Shown here: positions 31,810-51,100 of the stretch, one piece after another
Position numbering within the stretch: position 1 is the first letter of the stretch
Layout of the letters: every line of letters starts with the position of its first letter
Source: Macrostomum lignano
Lineage: Eukaryota
DNA length: 64,000 nucleotides
Assembly (NCBI GenBank): GCA_002269645.1
Contig: NIVC01001380.1
Span: 62,001-126,000, forward strand
Direction: 5' to 3'
Notes under the pieces: model-generated
Seen by the model: only the letters and a program-made list of their open reading frames with translations
Told to the model about the DNA's origin: nothing
The model's database searches: none
Program-made: the position numbers and the translations under genes

Positions 31810-34113
31810 ATGTCTGGCAAAGACTCCATCCAGCTAGGCAAGATGAAGGTGAACGCCAATCAGAGCGGCTGCTGCGGCGGTAAGGCCAACGAGAACAGCG
31901 CCGAAGTGCCCGAGATCACGCCGCCGCACATGGTCAAACCGAAAAGCGGCGATAGCGGCATCGACGAGCGGACGAAGGTGCGCAAGGAGAACGAAGACAA
32001 GGAGGCCAGGAAGGCCCGGCTTGCCGGCGGCGCCCTGGCCAAATCGCTGCTCGATGACTCCAAGGCGGAGCCGCTGCCGCCTAGGATTCGACGACCGGGT
32101 GAGACCATCCATCCAACTTGGAAGCCGGCGCCGCCGCCACCAAAGATGGCGCCATTGCCACCGCGCGGCGCCAAGTACAACGAAGCACTGGAGCATCATC
32201 TTAACCATCTGCCCTTCTACAACCACAAGCGATACGACCGCGTCGGCATCTTAAAGCGCATCAAGCGAATCAAGCCGCTTCGTGGACTGCTGCAGAACGG
32301 TCGTTATTTCATCGACAAAGATCGTCGGGCAGAATACGACCCTCGCATGGACCCGCAAGCGTTAGAAAAATACCTCAAGCAGCAAGAGAAAATGGGCCGT
32401 CGCTATCGCGCTGAAGGTCGCGTCAATCGCATCGTGGAGCTCTTTATGGACAAGGTGATGGGCTGGGGCACCTCCCGGGACCTGCTGCCGCCGAAGTCAA
32501 TCGTCCGTGGCAGTCCCTACTGCTTTATGTGGCTGGGGCCGCACTTGGCCAGGAAGATGCTGCACCAGCTGTGCGCCCCTCGCGATCCGACTTTGCTGTT
32601 CGAGACGATCACCAAAGAGCCGGAGGACAAAGAGTTTTATATTATCAATCGACTGCCGGTTGACTCGTTTTTCAAGGACAAGGAGAACTTCTACGGAATG
32701 CTCTCGCAGTACGTTCTCAGCCCGAATTTGGTGTGTAAGGCCCGCTCAGTTGATGAGTGCCTCTACCTAGCCAGCTTAAAAGAAGACTGTCAAGACCTGG
32801 AGTCGAAGGGGCTTGTCACGCGCCGTACCTGCGTTCACCAGAATCTGTCGCTCTCGCTGAAGCCGTGCCTCGTGTCCAACTGTCCCAACTATGAGAAGCA
32901 AGTCTGCTCGCATCTGTACGCCTTCATACCGGAGACCATCACATTGAATTCGTACACATCGATGTTACATTTCTCCGAACGCTTCCAACGCGTCGAAGAT
33001 TTAAAGGGCACCATCTTTATCACGAAGCCCGCCTACCTATGCAACGGTCGCGGTATCAAGTTCATCGTTGAGCTGGATCAATTTGAACACTTTTTTCACA
33101 TGCTCGACGGCAAGTCGACCACTCGTCACGGCGTCGTACTCCAGCGCTACATTGAATGCCCGCGCCTGTTCGACCGTCAGAAGTTCACAATTCGGTTCTT
33201 TCTGCTGATCATCGTGCTGGAGAAGCGCCGAGTTCTTGGCTTCATCCACTACGGCATCGCCATTTTCGCCCGGCTGCCCTACGAGACTGTGGAGCGCGAG
33301 GACTTCCTACCCGAAGAGGAAGCCAAAGAGGGCAAAAAGCCGAACTTGGACATCCCCATCACCAAGCGCTCGATCGGTCGGGTTACTACGGATAAGTTTC
33401 CTAGCGAGTCGCACCTGACCAACTATATGAGCCCGGCTCGCAAGGCCCGCATTAGGCAGGACATTTTCACGGGCCGAGCAAAGATGATGCAGGCCGACAG
33501 GGACAATGCATTCTATCTGGAGGAAATCCTGCCAAACAAATGCAACAACACCGCGTCAATCTACATCCAGATGCTGTTTGTGGGCCAGTGCATTTTAGAC
33601 TACATGCAGCCTATTGTGCAAGACTTTGCCGGCACCTTCCAGACTATCTCCATTGATTCACTGGTCGATGCGCGCAACAAACTTTGGGTACTGGAGGCTG
33701 GCACTAACATCTTCTCGGGACTGCTGACAATCGCGCCCAGGCAGCGCCAGATGATGTCCGCCATCATCCAGGAGTCAGTTGGCATCACCCTGGAGTGCGT
33801 GTACAAAACTCGCAACAATCTGCCTCTGTACTGGGACTACATGAACGACCGGGAGGACTACGACGCCATCTATTTCTCGCAGGACTTCAACTTATTCTAC
33901 GAGACCGAATGGTCCAGACAGTCTGGCGCGATCTTCGAGCGCCGGCCGCCACCCAAGCACCTGCTGCTGGAGGAGCGCTACGAACAGGTTGACAATCAAC
34001 GAGCCGCCGCGGCGGACAGGCGCGTGTTCAACTTTGAAAAGAAGAAGTCAATCGTTAGGAAGCGCGAGGAGTACATCGCCATGGTCAAAGCCAAGCACGA
34101 GGAAGAGTCTTGA
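31810..34113 (+). CDS. Intronless tubulin-tyrosine-ligase-like (TTLL, ATP-grasp) protein, 767 aa, divergent
   Basis: Uninterrupted ORF with FITKP, NGRGI, VLQRYI, KFTIR, HLTNY and IDSLVDARNKLWVLE, in the order expected for the TTL domain. Confidence 0.85.
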   Translation: MSGKDSIQLGKMKVNANQSGCCGGKANENSAEVPEITPPHMVKPKSGDSGIDERTKVRKENEDKEARKARLAGGALAKSLLDDSKAEPLPPRIRRPGETIHPTWKPAPPPPKMAPLPPRGAKYNEALEHHLNHLPFYNHKRYDRVGILKRIKRIKPLRGLLQNGRYFIDKDRRAEYDPRMDPQALEKYLKQQEKMGRRYRAEGRVNRIVELFMDKVMGWGTSRDLLPPKSIVRGSPYCFMWLGPHLARKMLHQLCAPRDPTLLFETITKEPEDKEFYIINRLPVDSFFKDKENFYGMLSQYVLSPNLVCKARSVDECLYLASLKEDCQDLESKGLVTRRTCVHQNLSLSLKPCLVSNCPNYEKQVCSHLYAFIPETITLNSYTSMLHFSERFQRVEDLKGTIFITKPAYLCNGRGIKFIVELDQFEHFFHMLDGKSTTRHGVVLQRYIECPRLFDRQKFTIRFFLLIIVLEKRRVLGFIHYGIAIFARLPYETVEREDFLPEEEAKEGKKPNLDIPITKRSIGRVTTDKFPSESHLTNYMSPARKARIRQDIFTGRAKMMQADRDNAFYLEEILPNKCNNTASIYIQMLFVGQCILDYMQPIVQDFAGTFQTISIDSLVDARNKLWVLEAGTNIFSGLLTIAPRQRQMMSAIIQESVGITLECVYKTRNNLPLYWDYMNDREDYDAIYFSQDFNLFYETEWSRQSGAIFERRPPPKHLLLEERYEQVDNQRAAAADRRVFNFEKKKSIVRKREEYIAMVKAKHEEES

Positions 34114-35145: not shown

Positions 35146-38100
35146 TCAGCGGGACTGCCTGTTCCGCGGCGGCGCGAACTGCTGTACATGTCGGCGCCCT
35201 TTGAGCGCGCGGTAGTAGCGCCGCGTTGGCCGCTTCAGCAGCTGACGGTGGATACGCGTTCTAAGATATATTTTTACTGTCAGTGAGCGATTTTTTGCGC
35301 AACACGTTGAAGAAATTCGGTTAAAATTCTTTTCTTGCTACTCATTAGTAAGCGATCTCTTATGTTTTTCAAAGCACATTAGAATCATTGAGACTGTTGT
35401 AAGTTCAAGACTTGTTGAAGTCTTTTAACTAAATTTACTAATATGGTCTTACATGTAGGTCAACGCACTTTAACGGTTCAGCATTAAATAATAACTTATT
35501 TGAACGTTATATCGCCTCATGATAACTTGGACTCCTATTTAGTTAAGTAAACCATTTTCTCTGAGACAATAATCAAACACTTATTAGAAACGAAAATCCA
35601 TGAAACAAGCTGTCACAACAGACAGTAGCAAACAAAAGCCATTCTATTTTTTTCGAAAGTATGAAAATAAAGTAAACAGAAAATCTCGGGAAATGTTAAA
35701 AGTTCAGTTCCAAATTTTAGCGCCAATAATGATTCACTTTTCTGTCTGAGCTAAAATTTTGACACTGTGCAGTTGCATTAGCAAATCCAGGTAGACAGCG
35801 GAATCGATCCCGGGACCTAGTCGGTCGGTCAGCACGCTGATGCCGCACTGACGCAGCAGTTCGATGAGTTGAGACGAGTAACTGGCCTGCCGTTCGCTGG
35901 TTTCCAAATCCGACACCTTGCTGAAGAACTCTCTATTAAACGTTCGATTTTGCATCTTTTTGGCGGCCAAATTTGAGTTGGTAATTCTCGAACCGGCTGG
36001 CACAGCGCTGGCATTCTTCAGCTTGGCACCCTTCGACTTTGAGGCCGATTTGCTTTTAGCTGGCGATGCTTTAGCGGCGTCTTCGGCCTCTTCTTCCCCA
36101 ATGGTCTCGCCGTTTTCAGCTGCGGCTTTGGCTCCTTTTGCTCCTTTTGCACCTTTGGCTCCTTTGGCTGCTTTTGCACCTTTCGCACCTTTGGCACTTT
36201 TTGCTGGCGCAGCTTCTGACGCCTCTTCGTCCTCAGCATCTGTCTCCGCATCTGCCACGGCTTTCGCTCCTTTTGCACCTTTCGCACCTTTGGCTCCTTT
36301 CGCGCCTTTTGCACCTTTTGCACCTTTGGCACCTTTTGCTGGTGCAGCTTCTGGTGTCTCCTCTTCCTCACCATCTGTCTCTGCATCTTCCGCAGCTTTC
36401 GCTCCTTTTGCTCCTTTTGCTCCTTTTGCACCTTTTGCACCCTTCGCACCTTTCACACCTTTGGCTCCTTTTGCACCTTTGGCTGGCGCAGCTTCTGGTG
36501 CCTCCTCGTCTTCGACATCTGTCTCTGCATCTTCCGCAGCTTTCGCTCCTTTTGCTCCTTTTGCTCCTTTTGCACCTTTTGCACCCTTCGCACCTTTCAC
36601 ACCTTTGGCTCCTTTTGCACCTTTGGCTGGCGCAGCTTCTGGTGCCTCCTCGTCTTCGACATCTGTCTCCGCATCTTCCGCGGCTTTCGCTCCTTTTGCT
36701 CCTTTCGCTCCTTTTGCACCTTTGACACCTTTTGCGGCTTTCATTCCTTTGGCGCCTTTTGCTGGTGACTTCACTGCTGCAGCTTCTTCGTCCTCCAATT
36801 CGGCCTCTGCATCTTCTGCTTCCGGCGCCGCGCCTTTGGCACCCTTGGCGCTCTTGGCGCCTTTTGCACCTTTCCCGCCTTTAGCACCTTTCGCACCCTT
36901 TGCACCTTTGGCGCCTTTAACTGGCGAAGACACTTCCGCTTCAGCATCCGATTCGAGACCTTCATCTCCGCTCAAATCATCTGCACCGACAGTCTTAGCC
37001 GCTTTCATTCCTTTGGCACCTTTGGCACCTTTTGCACCTTTGGCACCTTTTGAACCCTTTGCACCCTTGGCGCCTTTACCTAGCGAAGGGACTTCCGCTT
37101 CAGCATCCGACTCGAGTCCTTCATCTTCAACCACACCGTCTGCAGTTACGGTTTTAGCCGCTTTCATTCCTTTGCCGCCCTTAGCACCTTTGATACCTTT
37201 AGCACCTTTGGCACCTTTTGTTGTTGACATCTTTTCCGTCAGGTCTTCGTCTGCTGCGGCCGCCATCGCCTCCTCCAATACCTTTCCATCTTTGACACCC
37301 TTGGCTCCTTTTTCTCCTTTAGCAGCTTTGCCAGCCTTTGCACCTTTGGCACTTTTCGCCGATTTACCTGTGTCCGCTTCCTCGACTTCCTCAGCCGGCT
37401 CTTCTACCCCCTCTGAAGCTTTAGCACCTTTTGCACCTTTGGCATCTTTGACTGCAGCTTTGGCCAGCTTCTTGCCCGCAACCGCTGATGAGTTGAACAG
37501 TGGCGCAGCGGCTGTCGAGCTAGTCTGTACCATCGGCGCCGGAATCGCGGCGCGCTTGGAAAGACCGGTTGACCCTAATTTGGCGGTGGTGGAGGCTGCG
37601 CCAAGACCGAACGAGGTTGATGTGGTCAGGCGACCTGACGCGACCAGGATTCGCTTGCTCAGATAGCCCAGAACGCTTGTGGTCCTCAGCGCCGGGTCCT
37701 GCCAGGTGAGGGGTTTTTAACAATGCTTTTTATTGATGGCAATAAATAGTTGATTACACCTGCCACAATGAGCAGATTTGCAACCGACAAACAGCGCATT
37801 TGAAGGCTGTGCAAAGGCTGTTCAGTCCCATGGACAGCTAATGCTGGCACCCATTTTACGGCTTGGGTGAACTGAAGCAATGCAGAGTTAAGTGTCTTGC
37901 TCAAGGACACAAATTGTTCCGAGTGGGATCGGGGATCGAACCCCCGACTTTCAAGTTGAGTCTGACGCTCTAACCATTAGGCTATCATCCCACTACAATG
38001 CTTTTTAGTTTAACTTAAAACATACGAGCGTAATGCGTACATGTTTTACAAAAATTAAAACTGAGAAACACTCGTTCTTAACCCTAGACTGCGTCTTTAC

Positions 38101-39737
38101 ACGATTCGTGTGACTTCATGGCTTATCAATTGACGGCAGTGCAAACGAGCTTTGAGGGTAACTGTCAGTCATGAGTCATCTTTGTATTTGTCTTTTACAA
38201 ATTATAATTTAAATGCGGTGGAAAATGAAAGTCAAATAAAAAGCTCACTCACATCGATTCCAGTTAACTGCAAGCCGGTCCCATCTGAGCCGGCAGTCAG
38301 CAGCTGCTCATTTGCCCAGCCAATCACGGTAGCGGCTGCCTCGTCCAGCTCGCCGCAGTTCCCTGCCACGCGTCGGTACTGCCTCAGCGAGTGCAGCCGC
38401 ATCATGCTAATCAGCAGGTGCAGAATAGCTCGCAAGCCTCCAGCGGCCAGTTGCTCAGCAATGGCCAAGTCCAGCGGTAAGCCGTGCTGCTTGGCGCACT
38501 CCACCACAAGCACGCAGTTGGCCAGATGTTGCTCATCGCTACTGTTTAGTTCTCCTTCATCTGTTCCGGGCGAAGCTGTTGCTGTCACGGCAACACTGGC
38601 CCAGTTGACACTGCCCGGGGAGAGAGCTTCCCAAGCCTAAGCAGAATGAAAGATCTGATTGGTGAAATCAAACTATGCAACCAAGGTAGAACAATATTAG
38701 GATAAAAAAGTCACCTGTAGCAGTGCGAGGCCATCGCGTAGGTCGTCTGCTAGACGCGACACGGGCGGCTCTACGCCTAACGAATTGATCCAGATTTTGA
38801 TAGCGGCTGCTTCGTCAGTTTCCGGGTTGGCCTTGTCCAAGTTTTGTGTCAACTCAGTACCCGTAGGACTCTTAATGCTATTCTCATCTTCAGCAACTGA
38901 CTTGCGCCACAAGCATACCAGGTAGAAACTGCGCAACAGTCGAGCCCGATGATCCCTAGCAGCTTCCTCGTTCTCTACGTTGTCGCAGTCGTAATTATCT
39001 TTTCCATCGAGATGCTCTGAACTCAACAGACCGTTCAAATCAAGCGACTTCATGATGTCTTCAGTGTCGGCCTCGGGATTCTCTGTAGCGCTGAGAGCAG
39101 TGAGACGATGACAGGCTGACGGCTCGTTGCCTACGTAGCTGTTGCCAAGGTGACCGCGAATCCAGCTGCGAAATTCCATTGCCGATCTCTTATCTGGCAG
39201 GTAGCAACGATGCAGCGCCTGCAACAGGATGGCAATGTAGACGCCACAGTCGGCCCGGTCCAGACATTCAACCGTTAGGCCGCCAACGCTGACGCCGACG
39301 GATTCCAACGAGCCGATTGCTAAGTTCAGATTTTTGCGCCGCTTCCGAGCTGACAGCTTCGCTTCCGAATAGCTGGCTACCAAGCTCTCGTCCAGAGTCC
39401 CAGGCTTGATGACGTTAGCCAGAGCGCACAGAACCGCCCCGTCTTGTAGTCGGTCGAATAAATTCTTCTCGGACAGCGGCAGATAGTTGACGCCTAGCTT
39501 ACTACTCTTGGATAGTAGTCGGTTGAGGTGAGCGCAGATGCAGGCAACGTCGGAGCCAAAACGGTTGCGTACCGACTCCGCGGTGTAGCTTTTCTGTGAA
39601 GCTTTCAGCTCCTGCTGGTAGACTGGGTCCGAAAGCAGATGCTGCAATGTTAGCGATGATTTGAGAAACGGTCAAGACTTCTTCACAGGTTTATTTGAGT
39701 GTTTAGTTTCCCTCGTGATCCAATCGGTGTTGGCTAG
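35146..39737 (-). CDS. Plastin/fimbrin-like CH-domain protein with a long (GAK)n/acidic C-terminal tail. Minus-strand exons: [39737-39687], 39641-38715, 38636-38253, 37698-35738, 35260-35146; 5' end uncertain.
   Basis: LFDRLQDGAVLCALANVIKPGTLDE and NLNLAIGSLESVG (plastin CH1); AIKIWINSLGVEPPVSRLADDLRDGLALLQ (CH3); VIGWANEQL..LQLTGID|DPALRTTSVLGYL (start of CH4, spanning a phase-0 junction). GT-AG junctions at 38714/38637, 38252/37699 and 35737/35261 are all in phase. A 45-nt intron at 39686-39642 and an exon at 40954-40865 are tentative. Confidence 0.78.
37733..37994 (-). mobile_element. SINE family A copy in an intron of the plastin-like gene
   Basis: tRNA head plus CORE-like segment; 13-bp TSD ACAATGCTTTTTA (37720-32, 37995-38007). 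Confidence 0.85.
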
Positions 39738-39774
39738 CTGACGGAAAACAAAGACAGGCAGTTCTAGCTGACAG

Positions 39775-40000
39775 GGGGTCGTAGCCTATAGCGGTCAGGC
39801 TCAATTCCAAATGCAGTCACATTGGAATCTCAACTATTAACGCCCTTGAAGGTCAAACCCCAAAAGCACAGGGAAGTGTACATGCCTAACGAGTGTGTGC
39901 CTGTGTGCGTATGACTGTGTACGTATCTGCTTGTGTGCCCGCTCAGGGGAGTCGGCGGAATGGGCAGTATAAAGCCTCTCGTCTTAGAGGTCACTTGAAG
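39775..40000 (+). mobile_element. Degenerate SINE family B copy
   Basis: GGGGGTCGTAGCC head; AGTGTACATGCCTAACG and GGCGGAATGGGCAGT blocks are shared with 55640-56022. Confidence 0.65.
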
Positions 40001-41169
40001 TTTTGCATACAAAGTACCAGCTGCACTGGACACCAACATGCACATCCCTGACAAAAATTCTTGAGCTTATATGCATGATTTTTACTCTGTTTTCTATCTG
40101 TACTGTGCGGTAAAACTCATACTAAAGAGGCATTGTAATACAGTACAATCGACGAGAATCATTGATTAAAGAATCTGTTGCAACCCGTTATTTCGTAGTC
40201 CTCAGTGCTGGCCTCTAAGCTACATGAGAACGCGCTCCAAACTCCATTTTTGTGCAACAGAAGTATGGGACTTCTTGAACAAATTTAGCTTATACCAAAA
40301 GCTTTTGTGGGTTTCAAATTGGCTTATCTGAAACCCACACTTCAAGCGTCATTTTTATGGGCAAGAATTTTTCTACCTAATCTAAAATGGGTCTTGATGC
40401 CTCTATTGAAATTTAGGTAACACGAGTATGTAAAACCAATCCCCTTGACGAATCTCCCCACCAAAAACCCCCCATTCCGCATGCCCCAATGGTTGGCTTT
40501 AACTTTAAAAGCTATTCATAAGGTGGATTAAAGCTGCATAAAAAATGAAGCTTAAATTTAAGAACCGCACCACAAAGAACCTCTATGGTGACAAAATTAT
40601 TTTCTAAAAAACAAAAAACAAAACTGCAACTAATTGACGTTACCTAACTAAAGTTCAAGAAGTCCGAAGTATTAATTGGAACTATTTTCCCAACGGTTGC
40701 CCCGGACATCTGATCGGTTGAAATCCGTACCTACCAACTCCTACTAATTCCGAGACATTTTGTACTACCATTACCAACCACACCAGCTTCACTACTCTTA
40801 GTCTTTCAAATTCTTAATCTTATACAACCCACAATCGCAATCCAGAAGACCATGCAGCGCTCACCCAAGCTCCTTGTCGAAAAGCTCCGTGTTCAGACAT
40901 CAGTCGGCAGCCATTGTGCAGCTCATTGGGGAAGTTTGGTCGCCTTGCTTCCATGTTTGTTTGGTCAACCGCCAGGCTTCCAACAAACTGAGGGAGCTCT
41001 GCAGATTATTTGCTATGCTTCTTGGTTGTGAATTTCAAAGCCTACTAGCCCACTTCAGGGCCCACTTTCTGTGCCTTTGATTTGACTTAATCGCCATAGA
41101 CAACAGTGGGGTTACTGATTTTGAGTTTTCAAATTTTGTTATTGAGATTTCAATTCCTATAGGCCAGTT

Positions 41170-41480: not shown

Positions 41481-42196
41481 AACCTAAGGGTTTAAATAGT
41501 TTCTGATCGTCTAATTGTCACTTTTGACTCCCGGTTGTCTTGCAGAGGCATTTTTGGCTAGCCTTTTCCCCCTGTTCTGTATGATTTATGACCGCATCCG
41601 TCAAATTTCCATGGGTCTGGGAGGTCACCCTGTGGAGAGGGCTTTGAGGTTCTAAAGCTCAGCCAATCAGAGTCGAGCTAGTCATCTCAGGCTCGTCCAA
41701 TTAGGAAATTCGACTCTTGGTAAAACAATTGGGCAGCTGAAAGATTATGAGTATTATTGCGCACTGGACTGCCGGCTCGCTTGTCATCGAGTTATTGACT
41801 AAGAGCTAAGACTCTTCGGAAATAAGAGCGGCAGAAGCACCCCTTTTCTGGTTGTTTCGGTCCCTGTAACCTCCAGTTGGTCACCGTCAGTCTCCGCTCA
41901 ATCACACTTTTGAAGGCTGAACCCAATTACATTGTTGGCAAGAGTCCTCAGATCAGACAGAAACTTACTGGCGGTCCAAAAAGAGAAGGATAAACATATA
42001 TAGGCATCCGTAAGGCAATATTTAGGTATCTATGCTTTTTCGCCACTTCTACCTTAATCTGCAAGACGCAAATTTAGCTGATAAAAAATTACGGCCATGG
42101 CCTGAAATATCTTTAGATAACATCCTCGAGGCAATGCTTACTATTTAATGGTTAACGTTTTTCAGTTTGTTCATTCAGTTTGTTTACATCACCACT

Positions 42197-45100
42197 ATGT
42201 TTTCCAGGAAAGTTCGTTGTGAATTTCTCTTCCCCTGCTTCTGGCTGCTCCTGACTGCGGCTGCAGTTGCTCAAGCGAACTCGTGTGGAAAATTGGCCTC
42301 GGGTCAGGTGGATCCTGTTACAGTCCCCAAGGTGCACAGCTCGACAACTTCAAGTATAATAGTTGCTTGGCTGGCGCCAGACAGCGGCATCAAAGGGTAC
42401 CACTACATTGTAACCTGCCCCAGGTGCCCCTCTCCGAAAGTTAACACTACAGATGAGACATATACATTTCGGGGTCTCAGAGCGGCTACTGAGTACAGCT
42501 TCTCCATTCAGGCTGGACTTCCAAACTGTAGGCTGAGTTCTGCAATCAATCGTTCTGGAAGGACACGTGAGAAAGAGACTCGTTTTGCTTTGATATTGAA
42601 TTTTACGTCTGTAGCTCGAAGTTTATATTCATTCAAATTCTAGGGGATGCCGTGACTAAATATATATATTGATTACTAATTTACTACTTAATTTCCTATA
42701 GGTTTCGTGGTTTACTGTGTAGCATAAAGTATTGCTGAAGTTTTTAGTTGTAGCACAATATTTCAAAACCATCTTGCATAAAAACTACCAGCTGTCACAT
42801 ATCTCAGCTGTCATTTTTTGGGGACACTTTTAGCAAGTTTCGAAAATCGCACTTCAGAAGAATTGTCCATTCGTCGAAGATGAATTGAAGATTACGCTTG
42901 TCAATGGACACTGTCGACATTGTTAATGTTACATTACTTTGTGGGCTCTTCTTAACCTATATGAGCCTTGATTTCCGTGCCAATCTCTATTTTTTGTTTA
43001 AATGCATTCTTTAAGATATCCGTATGTCTAACCGGGTATTAGGGCATAAATTGCAGGGCTCTCTGGCATTGACGCCAGCTCAGCTCAGTACAGCTCCAAT
43101 GAGACCGCCATCTCTGTGACTTGGCAGCCATCCAGCACTTCTGGCGTCTCGTACCAGCTCACCTGCAAGCGAGTCGGCTCAGGTGAAGTCTCGACTGTGT
43201 CTTCACCCACTCCGAATGCCACCTGCGGCTCCCTGCAGTCTGGACAGGCCTATGAGCTGCGGGTGGCTGTGCAGAAGGCGGGATTTAATGACGTCATCAC
43301 GCGTCTGTCCAACCAGCTGACCAGTGAGTTCTCAATTGCTGCTGGCCGTAGATCTGCCTCCTACCGGCATGTAGTTTTTTTTAATAATAACAATTGATTA
43401 CACCTGCACCAATCGGCCAGATGTGCAACCGACAGCTCAGCCGCAGCTATTGTGCGGCGCATCTGAAGGTTGCGTACGGCTGTTCAGTCCAAGGACTGGG
43501 GGGTCGCCACACACATCCTCAATTACCCCAGCTAATGCTGGCACCCATTTTACGGCTTGGGTGAACTGAAGCAATGCAGAGTTGTGTCTTGCTCAAGGAC
43601 ACAAATTGTTCCAGTGGGATCGGGAATCGAACCCCCGACCTTTCAGTCGTGAGTCCGTCAATCTAACCACCACTAGGCTAGAGTTTTTAGAAAATATAAG
43701 AAACTTGCATGTCACTTTTAGAATATAAAAATCTGAAATGGACACGAGTCATCCATATTCATTTTCAACTTGAATTATTTTTCGAAGACAATTTGACCGC
43801 TACTTGAAGTACTATATTATAAAGATGTCGCTTACTCAAAAGTAGCAAGAAATGGGTTTGAAGTTAATTCCTCACAATGCGTACAAACGTTTGCAATCTG
43901 ATATTGCGTCCTCAGGTGAGGTTATAACTCAGCAGTGTGAAGACCCGTTGACAAAAATTAAGAGCTCAAAAAAACAATTTTGACCTTTCGTAAATTCAGT
44001 TTTAATTTTAGGCCCACCAAAGAGCTTACAGATGTGGTATAAAGTTCTCTGTTGAAACGAACAAGAAACGATTAAAGAATTTGTTCGAATTTGCTTGTCG
44101 GTGTAAAGTAATTACTCAACAAAGATGACTGGTTTTATAATCAGGAAATTTCATCTCATTGGCTGAATCAGCTGCCTACCCACTTCGCAACCGCAGCGCT
44201 CTTCCCGATTGACGCCAGCTCAGTGAGTTTCACCATCACAGAGACTTCCATCGCCCTGACTTGGGCGGCGTCCATCACTGAAGGAGTTCTGTACCGGGTG
44301 ACCTGCAGGCGAGTCGGCACAGGGAATTCAACATCTCTGCCTCCATCAAAGTATCTGAGTGCCAGCATCAGCAGTCTGCAGTCAGGAGAGGCCTATAACC
44401 TGTGTGTGGCTGTGACTAAGCAGGGCGGCTTCGATGAAGTTGTCACCTGGCTGCCAATCCAGCTGACCAGTGAGTTGGAGCTCAGCAAATGATGGCAGCT
44501 GCTCTCATGAGGCTCAGCTCGCTTCTATTGGGTCCGTTTCATTGCAGAGCTGTTCGGCATTGACGCCAGCTCAGCTCAGTACAGCTCCAATGAGACCGCC
44601 ATCTCTGTGACTTGGCAGCCATCCAGCACTTCTGGCGTCTCGTACCAGCTCACCTGCAAGCGAGTCGGCTCAGGTGAAGTCTCGACTGCGTCTTCATCCA
44701 CTCCGTATGCCACCTGCGGCTCCCTGCAGTCTGGACAGGAATATGAGCTGCGGGTGGCTGTGCAGAAGGCGGGCGGCTTTGATGACGTCATCACGGCTCT
44801 CTCCAACCAGCTGACCAGTGAGTCCTGCTTTTGTGCTGCTTTTGTCACGGCTTGTTCTCAAATCAGTCCTGAAGGTGTTCGCATTTTATAAGACATATTT
44901 TATGCAAGTATTAGCCCAAAAACCGATCTGTCTTTGTCATATTTATCCACCCGGATCTCATGTATCTTCTATTGTCTACATTATCTGTTTAATTTTCAAC
45001 TGTAACTTGATGATGCTGTATTTTTACTAATTGACCTTGATTGATTGATATAAGAGTAGATCCCTTACATCCCTCTGACAAGGACCACTTGAAGTTGTCA

Positions 45101-48094
45101 TTGTACTGGAACTTAACGTAAATTTTTTATCTTAAGATTGTGGTAACACCCAATTTTCACTGAATGATTTCTGCGAGATTCCTGATACGCAACGCCAACT
45201 TCTAGTGGTCCTTGGCTCTAAGTATGAGAAAGTCAGGGCCCCTGTGCATCCTGTGTCCCTCCCTCGCACCCGCCAACCGCCGCAGAGCTGTACTCAGTGA
45301 ACCCCAGCTCGGTCAGTTACTCATCCAATGAGTCAGCCATCAGCGTGACCTGGACCGCCTCAGCCACCGGTGCTGGAGTTCACCACCAGCTGCGCTGCCT
45401 AAGCGGCTCAGACGGCTCAGTCGTGATCAGAAATGTCACCTCGCCTGAGCAGCGGCTCAGCGCCACCTGCGACTCCCTGCAGTCGGGCTGGGAGTTCAGC
45501 CTGCAGATTGTCGTGCTGAAGGTGGGCGGCTTCGAGCCCGCATTGGCGGAGGTGGGACAGCTGCTCACCTGTGAGTCTCGGGCGCCAATCGTTCCTTTAG
45601 TTTATCAATTGTTCTTGGTGGAAGCCTAATGTCGTTTTAAAGTGCATCGGTGGGATCGTACTTTTTTAGATTTTCGGCACAAAAATTTAGTGTATGTTGA
45701 CTAGTACTGCCGGCCCCCTCTGGGGTAAGAGGCTTAATTAAGTAACAGTTCTTCCTAAGGCATCTCAGCATCTGTCCATTGAGTCTCTGGCATCTCAGCA
45801 TCTGTCCGTTGAGTCTCTGGCATCTCAGCATCTGTCCATTGAGTCTCTGGCATCTCAGCATCTGTCCGTTGAGTCTCTGGCATCTCAGCATCTGTCCGTT
45901 GAGTCTGTGGCATCTCAGCATCTGTCCGTTGAGTCTGTGGCATCTCCACATGTGTCCATTGAGTCTCTGGCATCTCAGCATCTGTCCGTTGAGTCTGTGG
46001 CATCTCAGCATGTGTCCATTGAGTCTCTGGCATCTCAGCATCTGTCCGTTGAGTCTCTGGCATGTGTCCATTGAGTCTCTGGCATCTCAGCATCTGTCCG
46101 TTGAGTCTGTGGCATCTCAGCATCTGTCCGTTGAGTCTGTGGCATCTCAGCATGTGTCCATTGAGTCTCTGGCATCTCAGCATCTGTCCGTTGAGTCTCT
46201 GGCATCTCAGCATCTGTCCGTTGAGTCTGTGGCATCTCCACATGTGTCCATTGAGTCTCTGGCATCTCAGCATGTGTCCGTTGAGTCTCTGGCATCTCAG
46301 CATCTGTCCGTTGAGTCTGTGGCATCTCAGCATGTGTCCGTTGAGTCTCTGGCATCTCAGCATCTGTCCGTTGAGTCTCTGGCATCTCAGCATGTGTCCA
46401 TTGAGTCTCTGGCATCTCAGCATCTGTCCATTGAGTCTCTGGCATCTCAGCATGTGTCCATTGAGTCTCTGGCATCTCAGCATCTGTCCGTTGAGTCTCT
46501 GGCATCTCAGCATGTGTCCATTGAGTCTGTGGCATCTCAGCATCTGTCCGTTGAGTCTCTGGCATCTCAGCATGTGTCCATTGAGTCTGTGGCATCTCAG
46601 CATCTGTCCGTTGAGTCTCTGGCATCTCAGCATGTGTCCGTTGAGTCTCTGGCATCTCAGCATCTGTCCATTGAGTCTGTGGCATCTCAGCATCTGTCCG
46701 TTGAGTCTCTGGCATCTCAGCATGTGTCCGTTGAGTCTCTGGCATCTCAGCATGTGTCCATTGAGTCTGTGGCATCTCAGCATGTGTCCGTTGAGTCTCT
46801 GGCATCTCAGCATGTGTCCATTGAGTCTGTGGCATCTCAGCATGTGTCCGTTGAGTCTCTGGCATCTCAGCATCTGTCCATTGAGTCTGTGGCATCTCAG
46901 CATGTGGCCGTTGAGTCTCTGGCATCTCAGCATTCTATTTTTTTTAAAAGTTGTGAAAAAGCAATTATTAGCGCAAAAGAGAAACGTCTCTGTCTTGCTA
47001 ATGTATTTTGAAACAAAAAAGGTTTTTGAAAAACGAATTTTGTACCGATGGTATCATTGTAAGTTTTGTATTTTTATTTAATGATTTAAATAAATACAAA
47101 AAAGTGTTGCATATTGCTGTGACTGATGGGGCACATAATTGCGGAGCGTTTTTAAATAATCTGATGTAACCGCCCTTTATGACCGTCTGCTCAGCGGAGA
47201 GGAGAGCAAATGACCATAGGGGGCAATGACCGTAGGCTTCCGATGACCTGGCAATGGCCTGACGGACCTCCAGCACCAGACTGTCCCGCCCATATGATTG
47301 ATAGCTTTGGTAGCGCTTTCGTGACCAGAGAGCCAAGGACCCACATGGACTCCGCCTGTAGCCAAGGTGCGTAAATTTGTCACTCTGCCATGGTATGACC
47401 GAGTGGCTGCCACCACTCTATATGACCTGGCGCACCTGGATCTTGATCAGACCTTTCGAGGCTAGAGCCCCGCCTGGATTGGTTACCAGGGGATTTAGGC
47501 TAACAGGGGAGACACATGCAGCCGAGTACAGGGAATCTGCTTTGGGTTCAATCAGGAACTCTCTGGGATCACTCTGGAGGATTTCTCAGCAGGGGGTCCT
47601 TTGTGGCTGTGATTGAGGCGGACTTGCGGCTACGATTACTAAGAGTAGTGTGAGTTGAACATGTGCTAGCTATAGTTTAGATTGCTTAGGGCGAAGGGAC
47701 GCGTCAGCATGGGGTTGCAACCTTCCTGTTGCCATTCTGTGCCAAGACTCGCTAATTCCCTCTACTGCACGCACACACAGGCGGGGCTTTGCACGGGGAG
47801 AGGCCATTAGCTTACCCAAACTTCCCTATACTTTGCCACCCAAGGAGTAAGGCCTAGCAAGCCATGAATGAAATGATGATGAAGGTGTGAAAAATGATGA
47901 GTTTAGTAATGGTTAATAATTAGACCCTCAGGCGAAATACACAGGCAATTAGGCGGCTTCACTATTGAATAAATACAGCAAAAATATGGTTATACAATTG
48001 GCTCAGCTCTCTGATCAAGCAATGGCAAAAAGGCAAACCCCGGATAAGCAAAGGCAATTAGAGCCCACATTAGTACAGGAACTTACCGGCGGCT

Positions 48095-48153
<59 letters not shown>

Positions 48154-51100
48154 TGGAGTGACCGAGGGCGGCTGTAGACTGCGGACAGGCAGGTAGCGAA
48201 GCGGCGATGCGCTGAAGTGACGAGGCGCTGATGTAGCTCAGGCGGTGCTGAGGATGCTGGGCGGTGTCAGACCGCGGGTCGGCAGATGAACTCGCTGGTG
48301 AGGGTCAGATCAATGTCTGACAGCAAGTCCACAGAAGGACCACTTCGGAGACGAGACACAAGAATAACTTCTGAGGGTTCTCACGCCGAAAATCGCTTCC
48401 TTAAATAGACCTCACGGTCGCCGCTCCAAGGTCGTTTCCATGACTCCCTCTCTCTGATTGGCTGCCGGAGAAATGACGTCAGAATGAGTCATGATGAGAA
48501 GCATGAGAACGGCATAGCAACATAAAAAATGGGAAAATCGCGCAATCCGGAGGAGGGGTGGGGGATAATGAGCACAGCGGGGGGTCGAGAAAGTGTTGCG
48601 CAAGCAAACACTGAGAACAATGGGACTCAGGCCGAGGAACAAAGGAAATGGAAATTGGGAATATTTGGGAGAACCGAGAACAATATAAAAGTAAACATTA
48701 GAGAAAAGGTGCTAATTGGGTGCGAAAAGGGGAACAATAGAACGAGAAAATCTGGGAAAATAGGATAATTAGGTGCGAAAACGAGAACAATAGAAGCGGA
48801 GGTGGGGTGGGTGTCACATGAGAAATCTTGAGAAGAGAACAATAGCATGGGAAAAAGTTGCGCAAGAGGAGGGTGATGAGTCATCGGGGGGGGGGGGGGG
48901 AGGAAGGGTCAAAAGCCTTGCGTCACCGTTTAGGAATCTAACAGAAGATGGGGTAACGGTGAGCCCAATCAATACTGTAAGTAGACGCAGGGTGAGGAGG
49001 GGACAGCGCAAGAAAAAAATGCTAAAACAGGAGGAGAAAAGGTGAGAAAAACATGAGAAGTACATGAGAAAAGGGGAGGGGCGCATGAGAAGTGGGGAGG
49101 CGGGCGAGGGGCACGTAGGGCTCCGGAAAGGCAAGTGTGGCTGACCCGGCCCAGTCTCGACAGCTCTGCCCAGTAGGTGCACAGGATGCTTCAAAACAGT
49201 TCCCTCACGATCCCGCGACCAGGGCGTGGCTACATCAAATCAATGTGCTCATGTACGAGTATGTATACTGGCCTGCACAATCTTGATCAGCTGGAATACT
49301 CCAGCTTTATAGATTTGTTTTATAATTCTTTCCTGTGTAATAACCAAAACAATTTGGTAGCATAAGAAGCAAAATGAAAGTTTGATAGTTGACAGTGTCA
49401 CTCAGCTCACAGTGTCACTCAGCTCACAGCGTCACTCAGCTCACAGCGTCACTCAGCTCACAGTGTCACTCAGCTCAGCTCACAGTGTCACTCAGCTCAC
49501 AGTGTCACTCAGCTCACAGTGTCACTCAGCTCACAGTGTCACTCAGCTCACAGTGTCACTCAGCTCACAGTGTCACTCAGCTCACAGTGTCACTCAGCTC
49601 ACAGTGTCACTCAGCTCACAGTGTCACTCAGCTCACAGTGTCACTCAGCTCACAGTGTCACTCAGCTCACAGTGTCACTCAGCTCACAGTGTCACTCAGC
49701 TCACAGTGTCACTCAGCTCACAGTGTCACTCAGCTCACAGTGTCACTCAGCTCACAGTGTCACTCAGCTCAGCTCACAGTGTCACTCAACTCACAGTGTC
49801 ACTCAGCTCACAGTGTCACTCAACTCACAGTGTCACTCAGCTCAGCTCACAGTGTCACTCAACTCACAGTGTCACTCAGCTCACAGTGTCACTCAGCTCA
49901 CAGTGTCACTCAGCTCAGCTCACAGTGTCACTCAGCTCACAGTGTCACTCAGCTCACAGTGTCACTCAGCTCACAGTGTCACTCAGCTCACAGTGTCACT
50001 CAGCTCACAGTGTCACTCAGCTCACAGTGTCACTCAGCTCACAGTGTCACTCAGCTCACAGTGTCACTCAGCTCACAGTGTCACTCAGCTCACAGTGTCA
50101 CTCAGCTTACAGTGTCACTCAGCTCAGTGTCACTCAGCTCAATCTCAATCCCTATCTCCCCGCCCTCCCCAGGGCCGCAGCTCAGCGCCGACCCCGCCAG
50201 CCGACCCTCAGCCGCGGCCGCGGTGTCGCAGCCGAGCGAGTCGCAGCCTGCCGAGGCGGTGCTGCTGCTCAACTGGACTTCCAGCGCTGCCGCAGGCGCC
50301 GACCTGCTGCAGTTCCGCGTGAGCAGCGCCTCGAAGCCCTACTTGCTGAGGGAGGCTGCGTTCAACTCGATGAGGCTGTTGCTGAGCCTTGCGGAGGCGG
50401 AGCTGCTCTCGCTGAAGCTGACGGTGGCGGTGGCTGCCGTGGCGAACAAATCCGGGCTGAGGCAGGAGGGCTCGGAGATCGTCATTGCTGAGCAGCTGCA
50501 GATGCGTGAGTTCAGCTCAGAGTCTTTGTTGTGAGTGAGTGTTGGTTCTGAGTGAGTGTTGGTTCTGAGTGAATGTTGGTTCTGAGTGAGTCTTGGTTCT
50601 GAGTGAGTCTTGGTTCTGAGTGAGTCTTGGTTCTGAGTGAGTCTTGGTTCTGAATGAGTCTTGGTTCTGAGTGAGTGTTGGTTCTGAGTGAGTGTTGGTT
50701 CTGAGTGAGTCTTGGTTCTGAGTGAGTCTTGGTTCTGAGTGAGTCTTGGTTCTGAGTGAGTCTTGGTTCTGAGTGAGTCTTGGTTCTGAGTGAGTCTTGG
50801 TTCTGAGTGAGTCTTGGTTCTGAGTGAGTCTTGGTTCTGAGTGAGTCTTGGTTCTGAGCCCGGTTTCCCCGCCGCCGTCCCGCAGCGCCCGGCCGCCCTT
50901 CGGTGTCGCTGCTGCCGGACAGGCGCGCCGTCGTGGTGTCGCTGACTGCCAGCCCCGGCTCCGAGCTGTTGACGGCGGCCGCCCACGCAGACAGCGGGAG
51001 CTTCGCTGCTGCTACCAACAGCTGCCGCCCGGACTCCGGCAGGTGCACCGTGGCTCTGCAGCCGCTGAGGCCGTTCACCAACTACTTGGTGGAGGCGGTC

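What the first reader, a model, noticed from the sequence alone, without database searches (positions are those of the whole stretch)
35146..39737. Plastin/fimbrin-like actin bundler fused by splicing to a ~600-aa (Gly-Ala-Lys)n / acidic polyampholyte tail
Seen: the ORF track lists the CH-domain ORFs (38697-39647, 38232-38588) and the AKG-repeat ORF (35734-37533) separately, but canonical junctions join them. Donor GTGAGT at 38252 splices in phase 0 to CTGGCAG at 37699, and the junction peptide LQLTGID|DPALRTTSVLGYL continues the plastin CH4 consensus (IxxFKDxxLSTS). The frame then runs without a stop into the repeats. A final phase-2 junction (35737/35261) gives a basic end (KTRIHRQLLKRPTRRYYRALK..). 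Established: plastins end shortly after CH4. Inference: this is an undescribed architecture in which an actin-binding head carries a long flexible tail of Gly-X-Y-like basic triplets alternating with Glu/Asp blocks. It could cross-link actin to acidic polymers (tubulin tails, nucleic acid, membranes) or self-assemble by charge complementarity in a specialised structure such as sperm, adhesive-organ microvilli or ciliary rootlets.
Basis: partly seen in the sequence, partly recalled or inferred. Interest (0 to 1): 0.8.

Follow-up and report, generated by a model that had tools for sequence, protein, structure and literature searches.

The report
Fimbrin-like gene with split CH4
This flatworm (Macrostomum lignano) gene encodes a divergent fimbrin/plastin-type actin-binding protein in which a 566-residue disordered stretch of alternating basic (Gly-Ala-Lys)n and acidic blocks is inserted inside the last calponin-homology domain; it is not a tail, and it enlarges a charged loop that related genes already carry.

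Summary
The core observation holds. The CH-domain ORFs and the GAK-repeat ORF are exons of one minus-strand gene. My model has four coding exons (40954-40865, 39641-38715, 38636-38253, 37698-35734) and gives 1121 aa.

The window is Macrostomum lignano. A ~97%-identical GenBank contig carries a transcript-derived gene with the same ATG and the same stop codon (1073 aa). A paralogue has introns at the same two positions.

The interpretation needs correcting in three ways:
- **Not a tail.** The 64 residues after the repeats are the C-terminal half of CH4. They are conserved in the two closest relatives and collinear with canonical CH4 (hhalign 97%). AlphaFold models them confidently within a fimbrin-like CH3-CH4 pair. 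The repeat array is therefore a 566-aa insertion in a CH4 loop, and the protein ends soon after CH4, as plastins do.
- **No extra basic exon.** The proposed junction 35737/35261 is unsupported.
- **Not a one-off.** Relatives carry roughly 50-100-aa charged inserts at the same site, so this is a tandem expansion of an existing loop.

The protein lacks EF-hands, and its CH2 is degenerate. Function is inferred only: an actin-binding protein whose block-polyampholyte loop adds electrostatic, multivalent cross-linking. It is a new variant of a known kind, of moderate interest.

The parts
40865..40954 (-). Coding exon 0 (first coding exon; ATG at 40954-40952). Encodes MEARRPNFPNELHNGCRLMSEHGAFRQGAW, followed by donor GTGAGC in phase 0.
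   Evidence: The GenBank gene on the allelic contig L001 starts at exactly this ATG. The motif NFPxELxNG matches P0002 residues 13-21 (weak tblastn).
38715..39641 (-). Coding exon 1 (309 codons): the pre-CH1 segment, CH1, degenerate CH2 and the start of CH3. Acceptor TTGCAG|, donor CAG|GTGACT.
   Evidence: The intron position LLQ|AWEAL equals LLE|VWDAM in the paralogue.
39204..39554 (-). CH1 (residues ~60-176 of the 1121-aa protein).
   Evidence: Pfam CH match. Aligned to CH1 of 1pxy, 1rt8, 7r94 and 1aoa.
38901..39176 (-). Degenerate, shortened CH2 (residues ~186-277). It keeps W-x3-H-L of helix A, lacks about 40 residues relative to relatives, and is not recognised by Pfam.
   Evidence: Alignment. 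Pfam finds 2 CH stretches here against 3 in P0002 and P0003.
38391..38810 (-). CH3 (residues ~308-421), interrupted by intron 1 (38637-38714).
   Evidence: The best Pfam CH match appears once exons 1 and 2 are joined (279-391 of the 480-aa construct, E 3.9e-22). pLDDT is above 90 in the AlphaFold model.
38253..38636 (-). Coding exon 2 (128 codons): the rest of CH3 and helix A of CH4. Acceptor CTTAG|, donor GAT|GTGAGT.
37699..38252 (-). Intron 2. It contains a tRNA-derived SINE copy (about 37745-37990).
   Evidence: Canonical GT..AG. The SINE aligns with a second copy at 43400-43690.
35734..37698 (-). Coding exon 3 (654 codons plus TGA): the rest of the CH4 N-half, the 566-aa insert and the CH4 C-half.
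   Evidence: The allelic copy shows 0 indels over 1965 nt. The paralogue's last exon has the same content.
37627..37698 (-). End of the CH4 N-terminal half: DPALRTTSVLGYLSKRILVASGRL.
   Evidence: Aligned to fimbrin CH4 in PDB chains and to P0002 and P0003.
35929..37626 (-). The 566-aa insert in the CH4 loop (residues 492-1057): a Ser/Thr/Ala-rich lead-in (37626-37465), the polyampholyte array (37464-36019) and a basic/Asn-rich exit (36018-35929).
   Evidence: Of 140 fimbrin representatives, 133 have 19 residues or fewer at this site.
36019..37464 (-). Block-polyampholyte array, 482 aa: 11 basic (X-Lys-Gly)n blocks (about +9 each) alternating with 10 Glu/Asp blocks (about -9 each). DNA periods are 9, 144 and 159 bp.
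   Evidence: TRF. Charge map. FCR 0.38, NCPR +0.03, kappa 0.41 against 0.175 +/- 0.02 when shuffled; 56 GAK tripeptides are written with 15 different 9-mers.
35737..35928 (-). CH4 C-terminal half (FFSKVSDLE...RQCGISVLTDRLGPGIDSAVYLDLLMQLHSVKILAQTEK), followed by the stop codon at 35736-35734.
   Evidence: tblastn of the P0002 C-terminus, E 1.75e-6. MAFFT register with canonical helices E-G. hhalign. AlphaFold pLDDT ~90.
35146..35261 (-). Not part of the gene as far as the evidence goes.
   Evidence: The GenBank CDS stops at the upstream TGA and relatives end there. The stretch is only a short GC-rich island.

Best explanation
**Architecture (shown, about 0.9).** One Macrostomum lignano gene on the minus strand, with four coding exons and a 1121-aa product, encodes a long-branch member of the fimbrin/plastin lineage.
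- It has no EF-hand headpiece.
- CH1 and CH3 are recognisable, and CH2 is degenerate and shortened.
- CH4 is split. Its N-terminal helices are followed by a 566-aa low-complexity, presumably disordered insert, then by its C-terminal helices and the stop codon.
- The insert is a tandem expansion of a charged loop that the two closest relatives carry in short form. P0003 has one basic K/P/A block followed by one acidic block, roughly 100 aa. P0002 has roughly 50 aa.
- The expansion used units of 144-159 bp built from 9-bp Gly-Ala-Lys codon triplets plus an acidic block.

**Mechanism (inferred, about 0.35).** The CH3-CH4 pair docks on F-actin as fimbrin ABD2 does. The polyampholyte loop projects from CH4 as a long flexible element carrying about 11 polycationic and 10 polyanionic patches. 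The cationic (GAK)n patches would bind the acidic actin surface, or the acidic patches of neighbouring molecules. That would supply multivalent, salt-sensitive cross-links or condensate-like self-association, compensating for a weakened ABD1 (degenerate CH2).
For: **One gene**
- The exons join in frame with canonical GT..AG sites and a single terminal stop.
- The GenBank contig NIVC01001679.1 (~97% identical) has an annotated gene with the same ATG and stop and a 1073-aa product.
- That annotation is RNA-seq/transcript-derived (PMC5730564).
- Both internal introns are at the same positions in the paralogue Mlig006537.
- P0002 comes from an intron-less RNA-type contig in which the equivalent junction is contiguous.

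**Fimbrin lineage**
- The best solved-structure matches are fimbrins and plastins (1pxy E 6.5e-22).
- In the search of 1.84 billion representative proteins, all hits below the two close relatives are fimbrins.

**Split CH4**
- The C-terminus is conserved in P0002 and P0003 (15 invariant columns; tblastn E 1.75e-6).
- The insert-deleted CH4 aligns collinearly with a 109-sequence canonical CH4 profile across the deletion point (hhalign Prob 97%, E 1.1e-10).
- The C-terminal piece alone scores 19.9 against 10.8 +/- 2.4 for 100 column shuffles.
- The AlphaFold model of CH3+CH4 with the insert trimmed has pLDDT 86 and pTM 0.80, with post-insert helices at ~90.
- Foldseek's top hits are fimbrin/plastin ABD2 over about 280 columns.

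**The insert is coding and constrained**
- There are 0 indels in 1965 nt between the two copies, against 8 in the 1230-nt intron 0.
- dN/dS is about 0.32.
- The GAK repeats are written with 15 synonymous 9-mer variants.

**Charge blockiness:** kappa is 0.41 against 0.175 when shuffled.
Against: - No expression, localisation or binding data were available here. Actin binding by these divergent CH domains is assumed, not shown.
- The GenBank product is 48 aa (one 144-bp unit) shorter than my model. I could not recover its sequence: 9 candidate products were not found by exact look-up. The exact repeat count in the mRNA is therefore unsettled.
- The AlphaFold model depended on an alignment that already placed the C-terminus under canonical CH4, so it is not fully independent.
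- A small canonical half-domain HMM barely detects the subfamily's CH4 halves.
- The dN/dS estimate rests on about 50 differing codons, and repeats may undergo gene conversion.
- Exon 0 to exon 1 linkage rests on the GenBank range and phase compatibility. Further small exons in intron 0 cannot be excluded.
Confidence: 0.7

Rival explanations
1. One reading: a complete plastin head whose CH4 is followed by a ~600-aa free C-terminal polyampholyte tail, ending in an extra basic exon spliced at 35737/35261.
For: - The frame does run from CH4 helix A into the repeats.
- GTGAAT at 35737 and a ...TCTTAG acceptor at 35261 exist and would keep an open frame for 36 more codons.
Against: - The 64 residues after the repeats are conserved in relatives and align with CH4 helices E-G.
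- AlphaFold and Foldseek place them in a fimbrin-like CH3-CH4 pair.
- The GenBank CDS on the allelic contig ends at the TGA at 35734.
- P0002 and P0003 terminate 5-13 residues after the same helix.
Confidence: 0.04
2. The CH exons and the GAK exon belong to separate transcripts or genes, and the in-frame junction is coincidental.
For: - ORF listing shows them as separate ORFs.
- No protein with the window's exact sequence could be retrieved from the protein collection.
Against: - A transcript-derived GenBank gene model spans both parts. A 1073-aa product is only attainable by using both the CH exons and most of exon 3.
- The intron position is identical in the paralogue.
- CH4 would be left incomplete on both sides of the split.
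Confidence: 0.03
3. The protein is a cytoskeletal cross-linker to microtubules rather than, or as well as, actin. The Lys-rich/acidic repeats would act like the KKEE-type repeats of MAP1B, binding acidic tubulin tails, or the divergent CH domains would bind microtubules as EB1, SPEF1 or CAMSAP CH domains do.
For: - Sub-threshold Pfam CAMSAP_CH and CH_2 (sperm CH-like) matches occur on CH3 in this protein and its relatives.
- Foldseek also lists EB1 and SPEF1 CH domains, much lower down.
- The repeat has a polycationic character.
- MAP1B's KKEE repeats are a microtubule-binding region (my own knowledge, not checked here).
Against: - The overall best matches, in sequence and fold, are tandem-CH actin-binding domains of fimbrins.
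- The CAMSAP_CH scores are below Pfam's cut-off (24.8 against 27 bits).
- The neighbouring TTLL gene is only positional coincidence.
Confidence: 0.12
4. The expansion is functionally neutral: a tolerant surface loop that accumulated tandem low-complexity repeats, as happens widely in this repeat-rich genome. The protein would then work like its short-insert paralogues.
For: - The window is full of tandem arrays.
- The array has no homologues elsewhere, only compositional collagen-like hits.
- Insert length varies greatly among relatives, from roughly 50 to roughly 100 to 566 aa.
Against: - The length and frame are identical in two ~2.5%-diverged copies, with 0 indels.
- dN/dS is about 0.32.
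- Synonymous diversity within the repeats, and the regular +9/-9 charge alternation, argue for selection on the peptide.
- A charged insert at this site is conserved across the subfamily.
Confidence: 0.15
5. The (Gly-Ala-Lys)n runs form collagen-like triple helices that trimerise the protein.
For: Pfam Collagen (PF01391) matches exon 3 with E 8.8e-18. Perfect Gly-X-Y register holds in runs of up to 9 triplets.
Against: - Runs are 9 triplets or fewer and are interrupted by non-Gly-X-Y acidic blocks.
- Proline makes up 2.7% of the array and, read from the sequence, lies in and beside the acidic blocks rather than in the (X-Lys-Gly)n runs.
- No signal peptide or trimerisation domain is visible in the sequence.
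- The only database 'relatives' are compositional hits to phage-tail-type collagen repeats.
- Short imino-acid-free triplet runs are not expected to be stable (my own knowledge).
Confidence: 0.03

Closest known systems
Fimbrin/plastin family (PLS1-3, yeast Sac6/Fim1, Arabidopsis FIM1; structures 1pxy, 1rt8, 7r94, 6vec)
   Same: - The domain order CH1-CH2-CH3-CH4 sits in one chain.
- The best sequence and fold matches are fimbrins.
- The protein ends a few residues after CH4.
- The CH3-CH4 model superposes on fimbrin ABD2.
   Different: - There is no EF-hand headpiece.
- CH2 is degenerate and about 40 residues shorter.
- CH4 is interrupted by a 566-aa insert, where 133 of 140 fimbrin representatives have 19 residues or fewer.
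- Identity to canonical fimbrins is only about 20-30%.
Macrostomum lignano Mlig006537 proteins (PAA62695.1/PAA72374.1, 'CH domain-containing protein', 693 aa; P0003) and the unnamed 672-aa transcript product P0002 (SRR30276804)
   Same: - Closest relatives, at 33-35% identity (E 1e-35 to 7e-39).
- They share the EF-hand-less architecture.
- P0003 has the same intron positions; P0002 comes from an intron-less transcript contig, so this cannot be judged for it.
- They share the split CH4 with a charged insert and the conserved C-terminal motif G-x-S/I-V-x-(T/A)-S/D-(R/K)-LGP-x-x-D-x-AVY.
   Different: - Their inserts are single short charged segments (roughly 50 and roughly 100 aa), not a ten-fold tandem array.
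- They have no (Gly-Ala-Lys)n.
- Their CH2 is still recognised by Pfam.
Charge-block (polyampholyte) disordered regions, e.g. MAP1B KKEE repeats and high-kappa polyampholytes in the Das-Pappu sense (my own knowledge, not checked in papers here)
   Same: A high fraction of charged residues (0.38), near-neutral net charge and strongly segregated charge blocks (kappa 0.41). Such sequences are known to bind polyanionic filaments or to self-associate electrostatically.
   Different: - There is no sequence homology.
- The region is embedded inside a folded CH domain instead of being a free region.
- The basic blocks have a strict X-Lys-Gly triplet periodicity.
Collagen-like Gly-X-Y repeats (Pfam PF01391)
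   Same: Gly sits at every third position within the basic blocks, and there is a Pfam match.
   Different: - The runs are short and interrupted.
- The runs contain no proline.
- The context looks cytoplasmic.
- The match is compositional only.

Membership tests
Fimbrin/plastin | Four CH domains arranged as two tandem actin-binding domains in one polypeptide (definition as in the abstract of PMC10533516, listed) | tested here: inconclusive
   - CH1 and CH3 pass Pfam.
- CH4 is recovered only once the insert is removed (hhalign 97%; AlphaFold/Foldseek).
- CH2 is present only as a shortened, degenerate segment that Pfam does not recognise.
Fimbrin/plastin | N-terminal headpiece with two EF-hand motifs | tested here: not met
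   No EF-hand family appears in the Pfam scan of the N-terminal 547 aa at E up to 1. Only about 59 residues precede CH1. The same holds for P0002 and P0003.
Fimbrin/plastin | Closest sequence and fold relatives are fimbrins, not other tandem-CH proteins (alpha-actinin, filamin, spectrin) | tested here: met
   - PDB phmmer: only fimbrin/plastin chains match.
- HMMER against 1.84 billion representatives: named hits are fimbrins.
- Foldseek: fimbrin ABD2 at E ~1e-6, against filamin at about 1e-3.
Fimbrin/plastin | Polypeptide ends shortly after CH4 | tested here: met
   The stop lies 12 codons after the MQLH of the last-helix motif LLMQLH. The GenBank model and the relatives end at the same place.
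Fimbrin/plastin | Binds and bundles F-actin | not testable with these tools
   Needs co-sedimentation or bundling assays, or localisation.
Split-CH4 fimbrin-like subfamily (this gene, Mlig006537/P0003, P0002) | A charged insert between CH4 helix C and helix E, plus the conserved C-terminal LGPxxDxAVY motif; for the two genomic members (this gene and P0003), also the shared intron positions | tested here: met
   P0002 comes from an intron-less transcript contig, so its introns could not be compared.
Collagen triple-helix repeat proteins | Long uninterrupted Gly-X-Y with a high imino-acid content, in a secreted or trimerising context | tested here: not met
   - The longest run is 9 triplets.
- Proline is 2.7% of the array; read from the sequence, it lies in and beside the acidic blocks rather than in the Gly-X-Y runs.
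- The N-terminus has no hydrophobic signal-like stretch (by eye).
- Database hits are compositional only.

The most novel reading that the evidence does not exclude
This would be a fimbrin that has changed its cross-linking principle. With ABD1 decaying (degenerate CH2), a giant block-polyampholyte loop grown inside CH4 would supply the second valence. One folded actin-binding domain plus an electrostatic, multivalent, possibly phase-separating element would then build a specialised actin structure in the flatworm. That would be an example of a folded CH domain hosting a functional 566-aa disordered insert.
Probability: 0.2. Interest if true: 0.65.

Novelty: new variant of a known kind. Interest (0 to 1): 0.4.

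Why it matters
If the architecture is expressed as modelled, a CH domain tolerates a 566-residue disordered insert in a surface loop, and it does so within a small subfamily of fimbrin-like proteins. That subfamily was seen here only in Macrostomum and in one transcript of unknown organism. It would offer a natural system for asking how charge-patterned disordered regions modulate an actin cross-linker (spacing, valence, salt sensitivity, condensation).

For annotation it carries a practical lesson. Domain scanners miss CH4 here because it is split, and the public gene model is probably one repeat unit short. The finding is lineage-specific and has no functional data, so its wider importance is uncertain.

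Tried and rejected
- **Single-sequence AlphaFold** of the insert-deleted CH4 gave pLDDT 37 and was uninformative.
- **Word-indexed protein searches.** The CH part returned only a plant fimbrin. Exon 3 returned only compositional collagen-like hits. Neither returned the window's own protein nor the GenBank allele.
- **Recovering the 1073-aa GenBank product.** I deleted each possible 144-nt GT..AG segment from the allelic CDS (13 candidates). The 9 best were not found by exact look-up.
- **Other look-ups.** The 599-aa ORF product is not on record.
- **RNA gene scans.** ARAGORN and Rfam found no tRNA or RNA gene in the window, even though a tRNA-like SINE head is visible.
- **Literature.** The locus tags Mlig027040 and Mlig006537 returned no papers. 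A search for Macrostomum together with fimbrin or plastin gave nothing relevant.
- **Small canonical CH4 half-domain HMMs** (5 sequences) hardly detect the subfamily. The first small hhalign run was weak (P = 0.04). A 109-sequence profile was needed.
- **Upstream exons.** ORF listing between 39.6 and 42.2 kb was not decisive on its own. The first exon was fixed only through the allelic GenBank model.
- **'The insert evolves faster than the CH exons'** was considered and dropped. dN/dS is about 0.3 everywhere, and the difference lies in dS (0.003 against 0.05). That points to mosaic divergence or gene conversion between the two copies.
- A 97-sequence alignment call failed internally and was repeated with 42 sequences.

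Full report
**1. What is in the sequence**

On the minus strand the region contains three long open stretches. ORFs 38697-39647 and 38232-38588 have Pfam CH-domain matches. ORF 35734-37533 encodes the Gly-Ala-Lys/acidic repeats and gets only a compositional Collagen match.

Tandem Repeats Finder reports periods of 9, 144 and 159 bp between 36126 and 37220.

- exon 1: TTGCAG|CAT...CAG|GTGACT
- exon 2: CTTAG|GCT...GAT|GTGAGT
- exon 3: TGGCAG|GAC...

All three exon lengths are multiples of three. Joined, they give one frame with a single stop at the very end.

**2. Organism and independent gene model**

The neighbouring single-exon tubulin-tyrosine-ligase-like gene (31810-34113, +) is 100% identical to Macrostomum lignano BOX15_Mlig027040g2. 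Its GenBank contig, NIVC01001679.1 (L001), is about 97% identical to the window, with many indels. It is therefore another allele or duplicated copy, not the same sequence.

On that contig GenBank annotates a minus-strand gene with a 1073-residue product. Its first bases are ATGGAAGCAAGG..., which is the ATG at window 40954. Its last bases are the TGA corresponding to window 35736-35734.

The GenBank annotation of this assembly was built from RNA-seq and de novo transcripts (StringTie/TACO/TBONE, ORFs by TransDecoder; PMC5730564).

Using my splice sites, both copies give 1121 aa. The difference from 1073 is exactly 48 aa, one 144-bp repeat unit. I take this as a collapsed repeat in the transcript-based model, but I could not prove it, because 9 candidate sequences were not found by exact look-up.

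Either way, a 1073-aa product between that ATG and that stop must contain both the CH exons and nearly all of the repeat exon.

**3. Relatives**

A full HMMER scan of 1.84 billion representative proteins used the repeat-deleted protein as query. It found only two close relatives:
- P0002: 672 aa, from an intron-less Logan contig of run SRR30276804, organism unknown.
- P0003: 693 aa, M. lignano PAA62695.1.

P0004 is a partial M. lignano paralogue. Everything else is canonical fimbrin from scattered eukaryotes, including Thecamoeba, Gordionus, Mesocestoides 'Fimbrin', Closterium and Populus 'fimbrin-1-like'. Against solved structures only fimbrin/plastin chains match, with 1pxy at E 6.5e-22.

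In the P0003 locus (L003) the two internal introns lie at exactly the same codon boundaries as here: LLE|VWDAM matches LLQ|AWEAL, and KSVD|DPNLK matches TGID|DPALR. The last exon likewise runs from DP.L.. to the stop.

**4. The repeats are an insert in CH4, not a tail**

Both relatives continue after '..DDPxLKxTxA(L/V)xY/F(L/F)xER(I/L)L(V/I)E' with a variable charged stretch:
- P0002 has roughly 50 aa.
- P0003 has roughly 100 aa: a K/P/A-rich basic block, then a D/E-rich block.

Both then carry a conserved C-terminus, '...G(I/M/V)(S/I)V(L/F/Y)(T/A)(D/S)(R/K)LGPxxDxAVYxxLLxQL...', followed by the stop. The window protein has the same C-terminus after its repeats. tblastn of the P0002 C-terminus hits 35943-35770 with E 1.75e-6.

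In a joint alignment this segment falls under helices E-G of canonical CH4 ('NAKYAISVARKLGasiFlLPEDIvEV..KMlLT'), with the Gly of RKLG invariant.

Profile tests:
- The subfamily CH4 with the insert removed aligns collinearly, across the deletion point, with a 109-sequence canonical CH4 profile (hhalign probability 97%, E 1.1e-10).
- The C-terminal piece alone aligns in the expected register with score 19.9. One hundred column-shuffled controls gave 10.8 +/- 2.4, and none reached 19.9.

With a 42-sequence alignment, AlphaFold2 models CH3+CH4 (insert trimmed to about 30 residues) at mean pLDDT 86 and pTM 0.80. The post-insert helices are at about 90, and only the trimmed linker is low. Foldseek's best PDB matches are fimbrin/plastin ABD2 over about 280 columns. 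One caveat applies: the input alignment already placed the C-terminus under CH4.

Among 140 fimbrin representatives, 133 have 19 residues or fewer between the two CH4 halves. Here there are 566.

Consequently the protein does end shortly after CH4.

**5. Other features of the protein**

- No EF-hand is detectable, and only about 59 residues precede CH1.
- CH2 is shortened by about 40 residues and Pfam does not recognise it, whereas P0002 and P0003 keep a recognisable CH2.

The insert has three parts:
- a Ser/Thr/Ala-rich lead-in (37626-37465)
- a 482-aa array (37464-36019)
- a short basic/Asn-rich exit (36018-35929)

The array has 11 basic (X-Lys-Gly)n blocks, most of +7 to +10 net charge. They alternate with 10 acidic blocks, most of -8 to -9. 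Composition is Ala 28%, Lys 20%, Gly 17%, Glu+Asp 17%, Pro 2.7% and large hydrophobic residues 7%. The fraction of charged residues is 0.38 and the net charge per residue is +0.03. The charge-segregation parameter kappa is 0.41, against 0.175 +/- 0.02 for shuffles.

The 56 Gly-Ala-Lys tripeptides are written with 15 different 9-mers, so the repeat is maintained at the peptide level and is not a pure microsatellite.

Between the two genomic copies, exon 3 has 49 substitutions and no indel in 1965 nt. Intron 0 has 8 indels in 1230 nt.

dN/dS is about 0.3 in the insert, as in the rest of the gene. dS is 0.05 in exon 3 but 0.003 in the CH exons, which indicates mosaic divergence between the copies, probably from conversion or recombination.

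**6. How it probably works (inference)**

By homology, the CH3-CH4 pair should bind F-actin as fimbrin ABD2 does. The insert emerges from the loop between the helix C region and helix E of CH4. It should be a long, flexible, strongly charge-segregated polyampholyte.

The explanation I favour, at about 0.35, is as follows. The polycationic (GAK)n patches contact the acidic actin surface or the acidic patches of neighbouring molecules. This gives multivalent, salt-sensitive cross-linking or self-association and compensates for a decayed ABD1.

Alternatives:
- microtubule or tubulin-tail binding
- a neutral repeat expansion in a tolerant loop
- an entropic spacer
- a collagen-like triple helix, which is unlikely given runs of 9 triplets or fewer with no proline in them

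None of these could be tested with sequence tools.

**7. Comparison and novelty**

The gene belongs to the fimbrin/plastin lineage by descent. It fails one defining feature (the EF-hand headpiece) and is inconclusive on another (four intact CH domains). I therefore call it fimbrin-like and not a plastin.

With P0002 and P0003 it forms a small 'split-CH4' subfamily. Within it, this gene is the extreme case, produced by tandem amplification of a basic+acidic module.

The locus is already in GenBank as an uncharacterised hypothetical protein. No paper mentions it. I rate it a new variant of a known kind, with interest about 0.4.

Noticed in passing
window 37745-37990 (intron 2, minus strand) and 43400-43690 (minus strand); also in introns of L003: Copies of a tRNA-derived SINE: a tRNA-like head (...GGTTCGATCCCCGATCCCACT) followed by the conserved core GTGTCCTTGAGCAAGACAC..TGCATTGCTTCAGTTCACCCAAGCCGTAAAATGGGTGCCAGC. 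The two window copies align at about 80% identity. ARAGORN and Rfam do not call them.
   Followed up: partly
window 35734-40954 compared with L001 13925-19087: Divergence between the window and the GenBank copy is mosaic. It is about 0.2% across exon 1 to intron 2, but 2.5% in exon 3 and 4.8% (with 8 indels) in intron 0. dS is 0.003 against 0.05. This suggests gene conversion or recombination between duplicated copies of this partly duplicated genome.
   Followed up: partly
L001 13925-19087 (GenBank NIVC01001679.1): The annotated product (1073 aa) is exactly 48 aa, one 144-bp repeat unit, shorter than the 1121 aa the genomic sequence encodes with the same splice sites. This is probably a collapsed repeat in the transcript-derived model, or a real in-frame 'exitron'.
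   Followed up: partly
window 31810-34113 (+): A single-exon 767-aa tubulin-tyrosine-ligase-like gene (Pfam TTL), 100% identical to BOX15_Mlig027040g2. It is convergent with the fimbrin-like gene, and their stop codons are about 1.6 kb apart.
   Followed up: partly
window 42167-45600 (+) and 50903-52114 (+): A signal-peptide-like start followed by a fibronectin type III domain (42167-42643, fn3 E 1e-8). Downstream, to about 45.6 kb, lie near-identical repeated segments that look coding on the + strand. Another fn3-bearing ORF lies in a 66% GC stretch at 50.9-52.1 kb.
   Followed up: partly
window 58604-61977 and 62765-63916: Very large C-rich satellite arrays: a 23/35/58-bp unit CCCTCTAATC(C/T)G in about 145 copies, and a 22-bp unit in about 52 copies. 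GC skew is -0.5 to -0.6. Many further minisatellites occur, for example 705-1427, 45759-46933 (30 bp x 39, inside an ORF) and 49392-50141.
   Followed up: no
L003 1-1227 (GenBank NIVC01001909.1): Immediately upstream of the paralogue Mlig006537 lies another annotated CH-domain gene (640-aa product). The fimbrin-like subfamily may therefore be tandemly duplicated in M. lignano.
   Followed up: no
L003 about 5500-5950 (intron between KSVD and DPNLK of the paralogue): The homologous intron of the paralogue is filled with a tandem repeat. It reads as an open frame (HIPHMSHSSHVTFLTC...) but is not part of the annotated protein.
   Followed up: no
window 2497-3159, 4935-6734, 11100-12164 (+): Other coding pieces in the window: a subtilase C-terminal fragment, a growth-factor-receptor domain IV-like Cys-rich ORF, and an ankyrin-repeat ORF (Pfam).
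   Followed up: no
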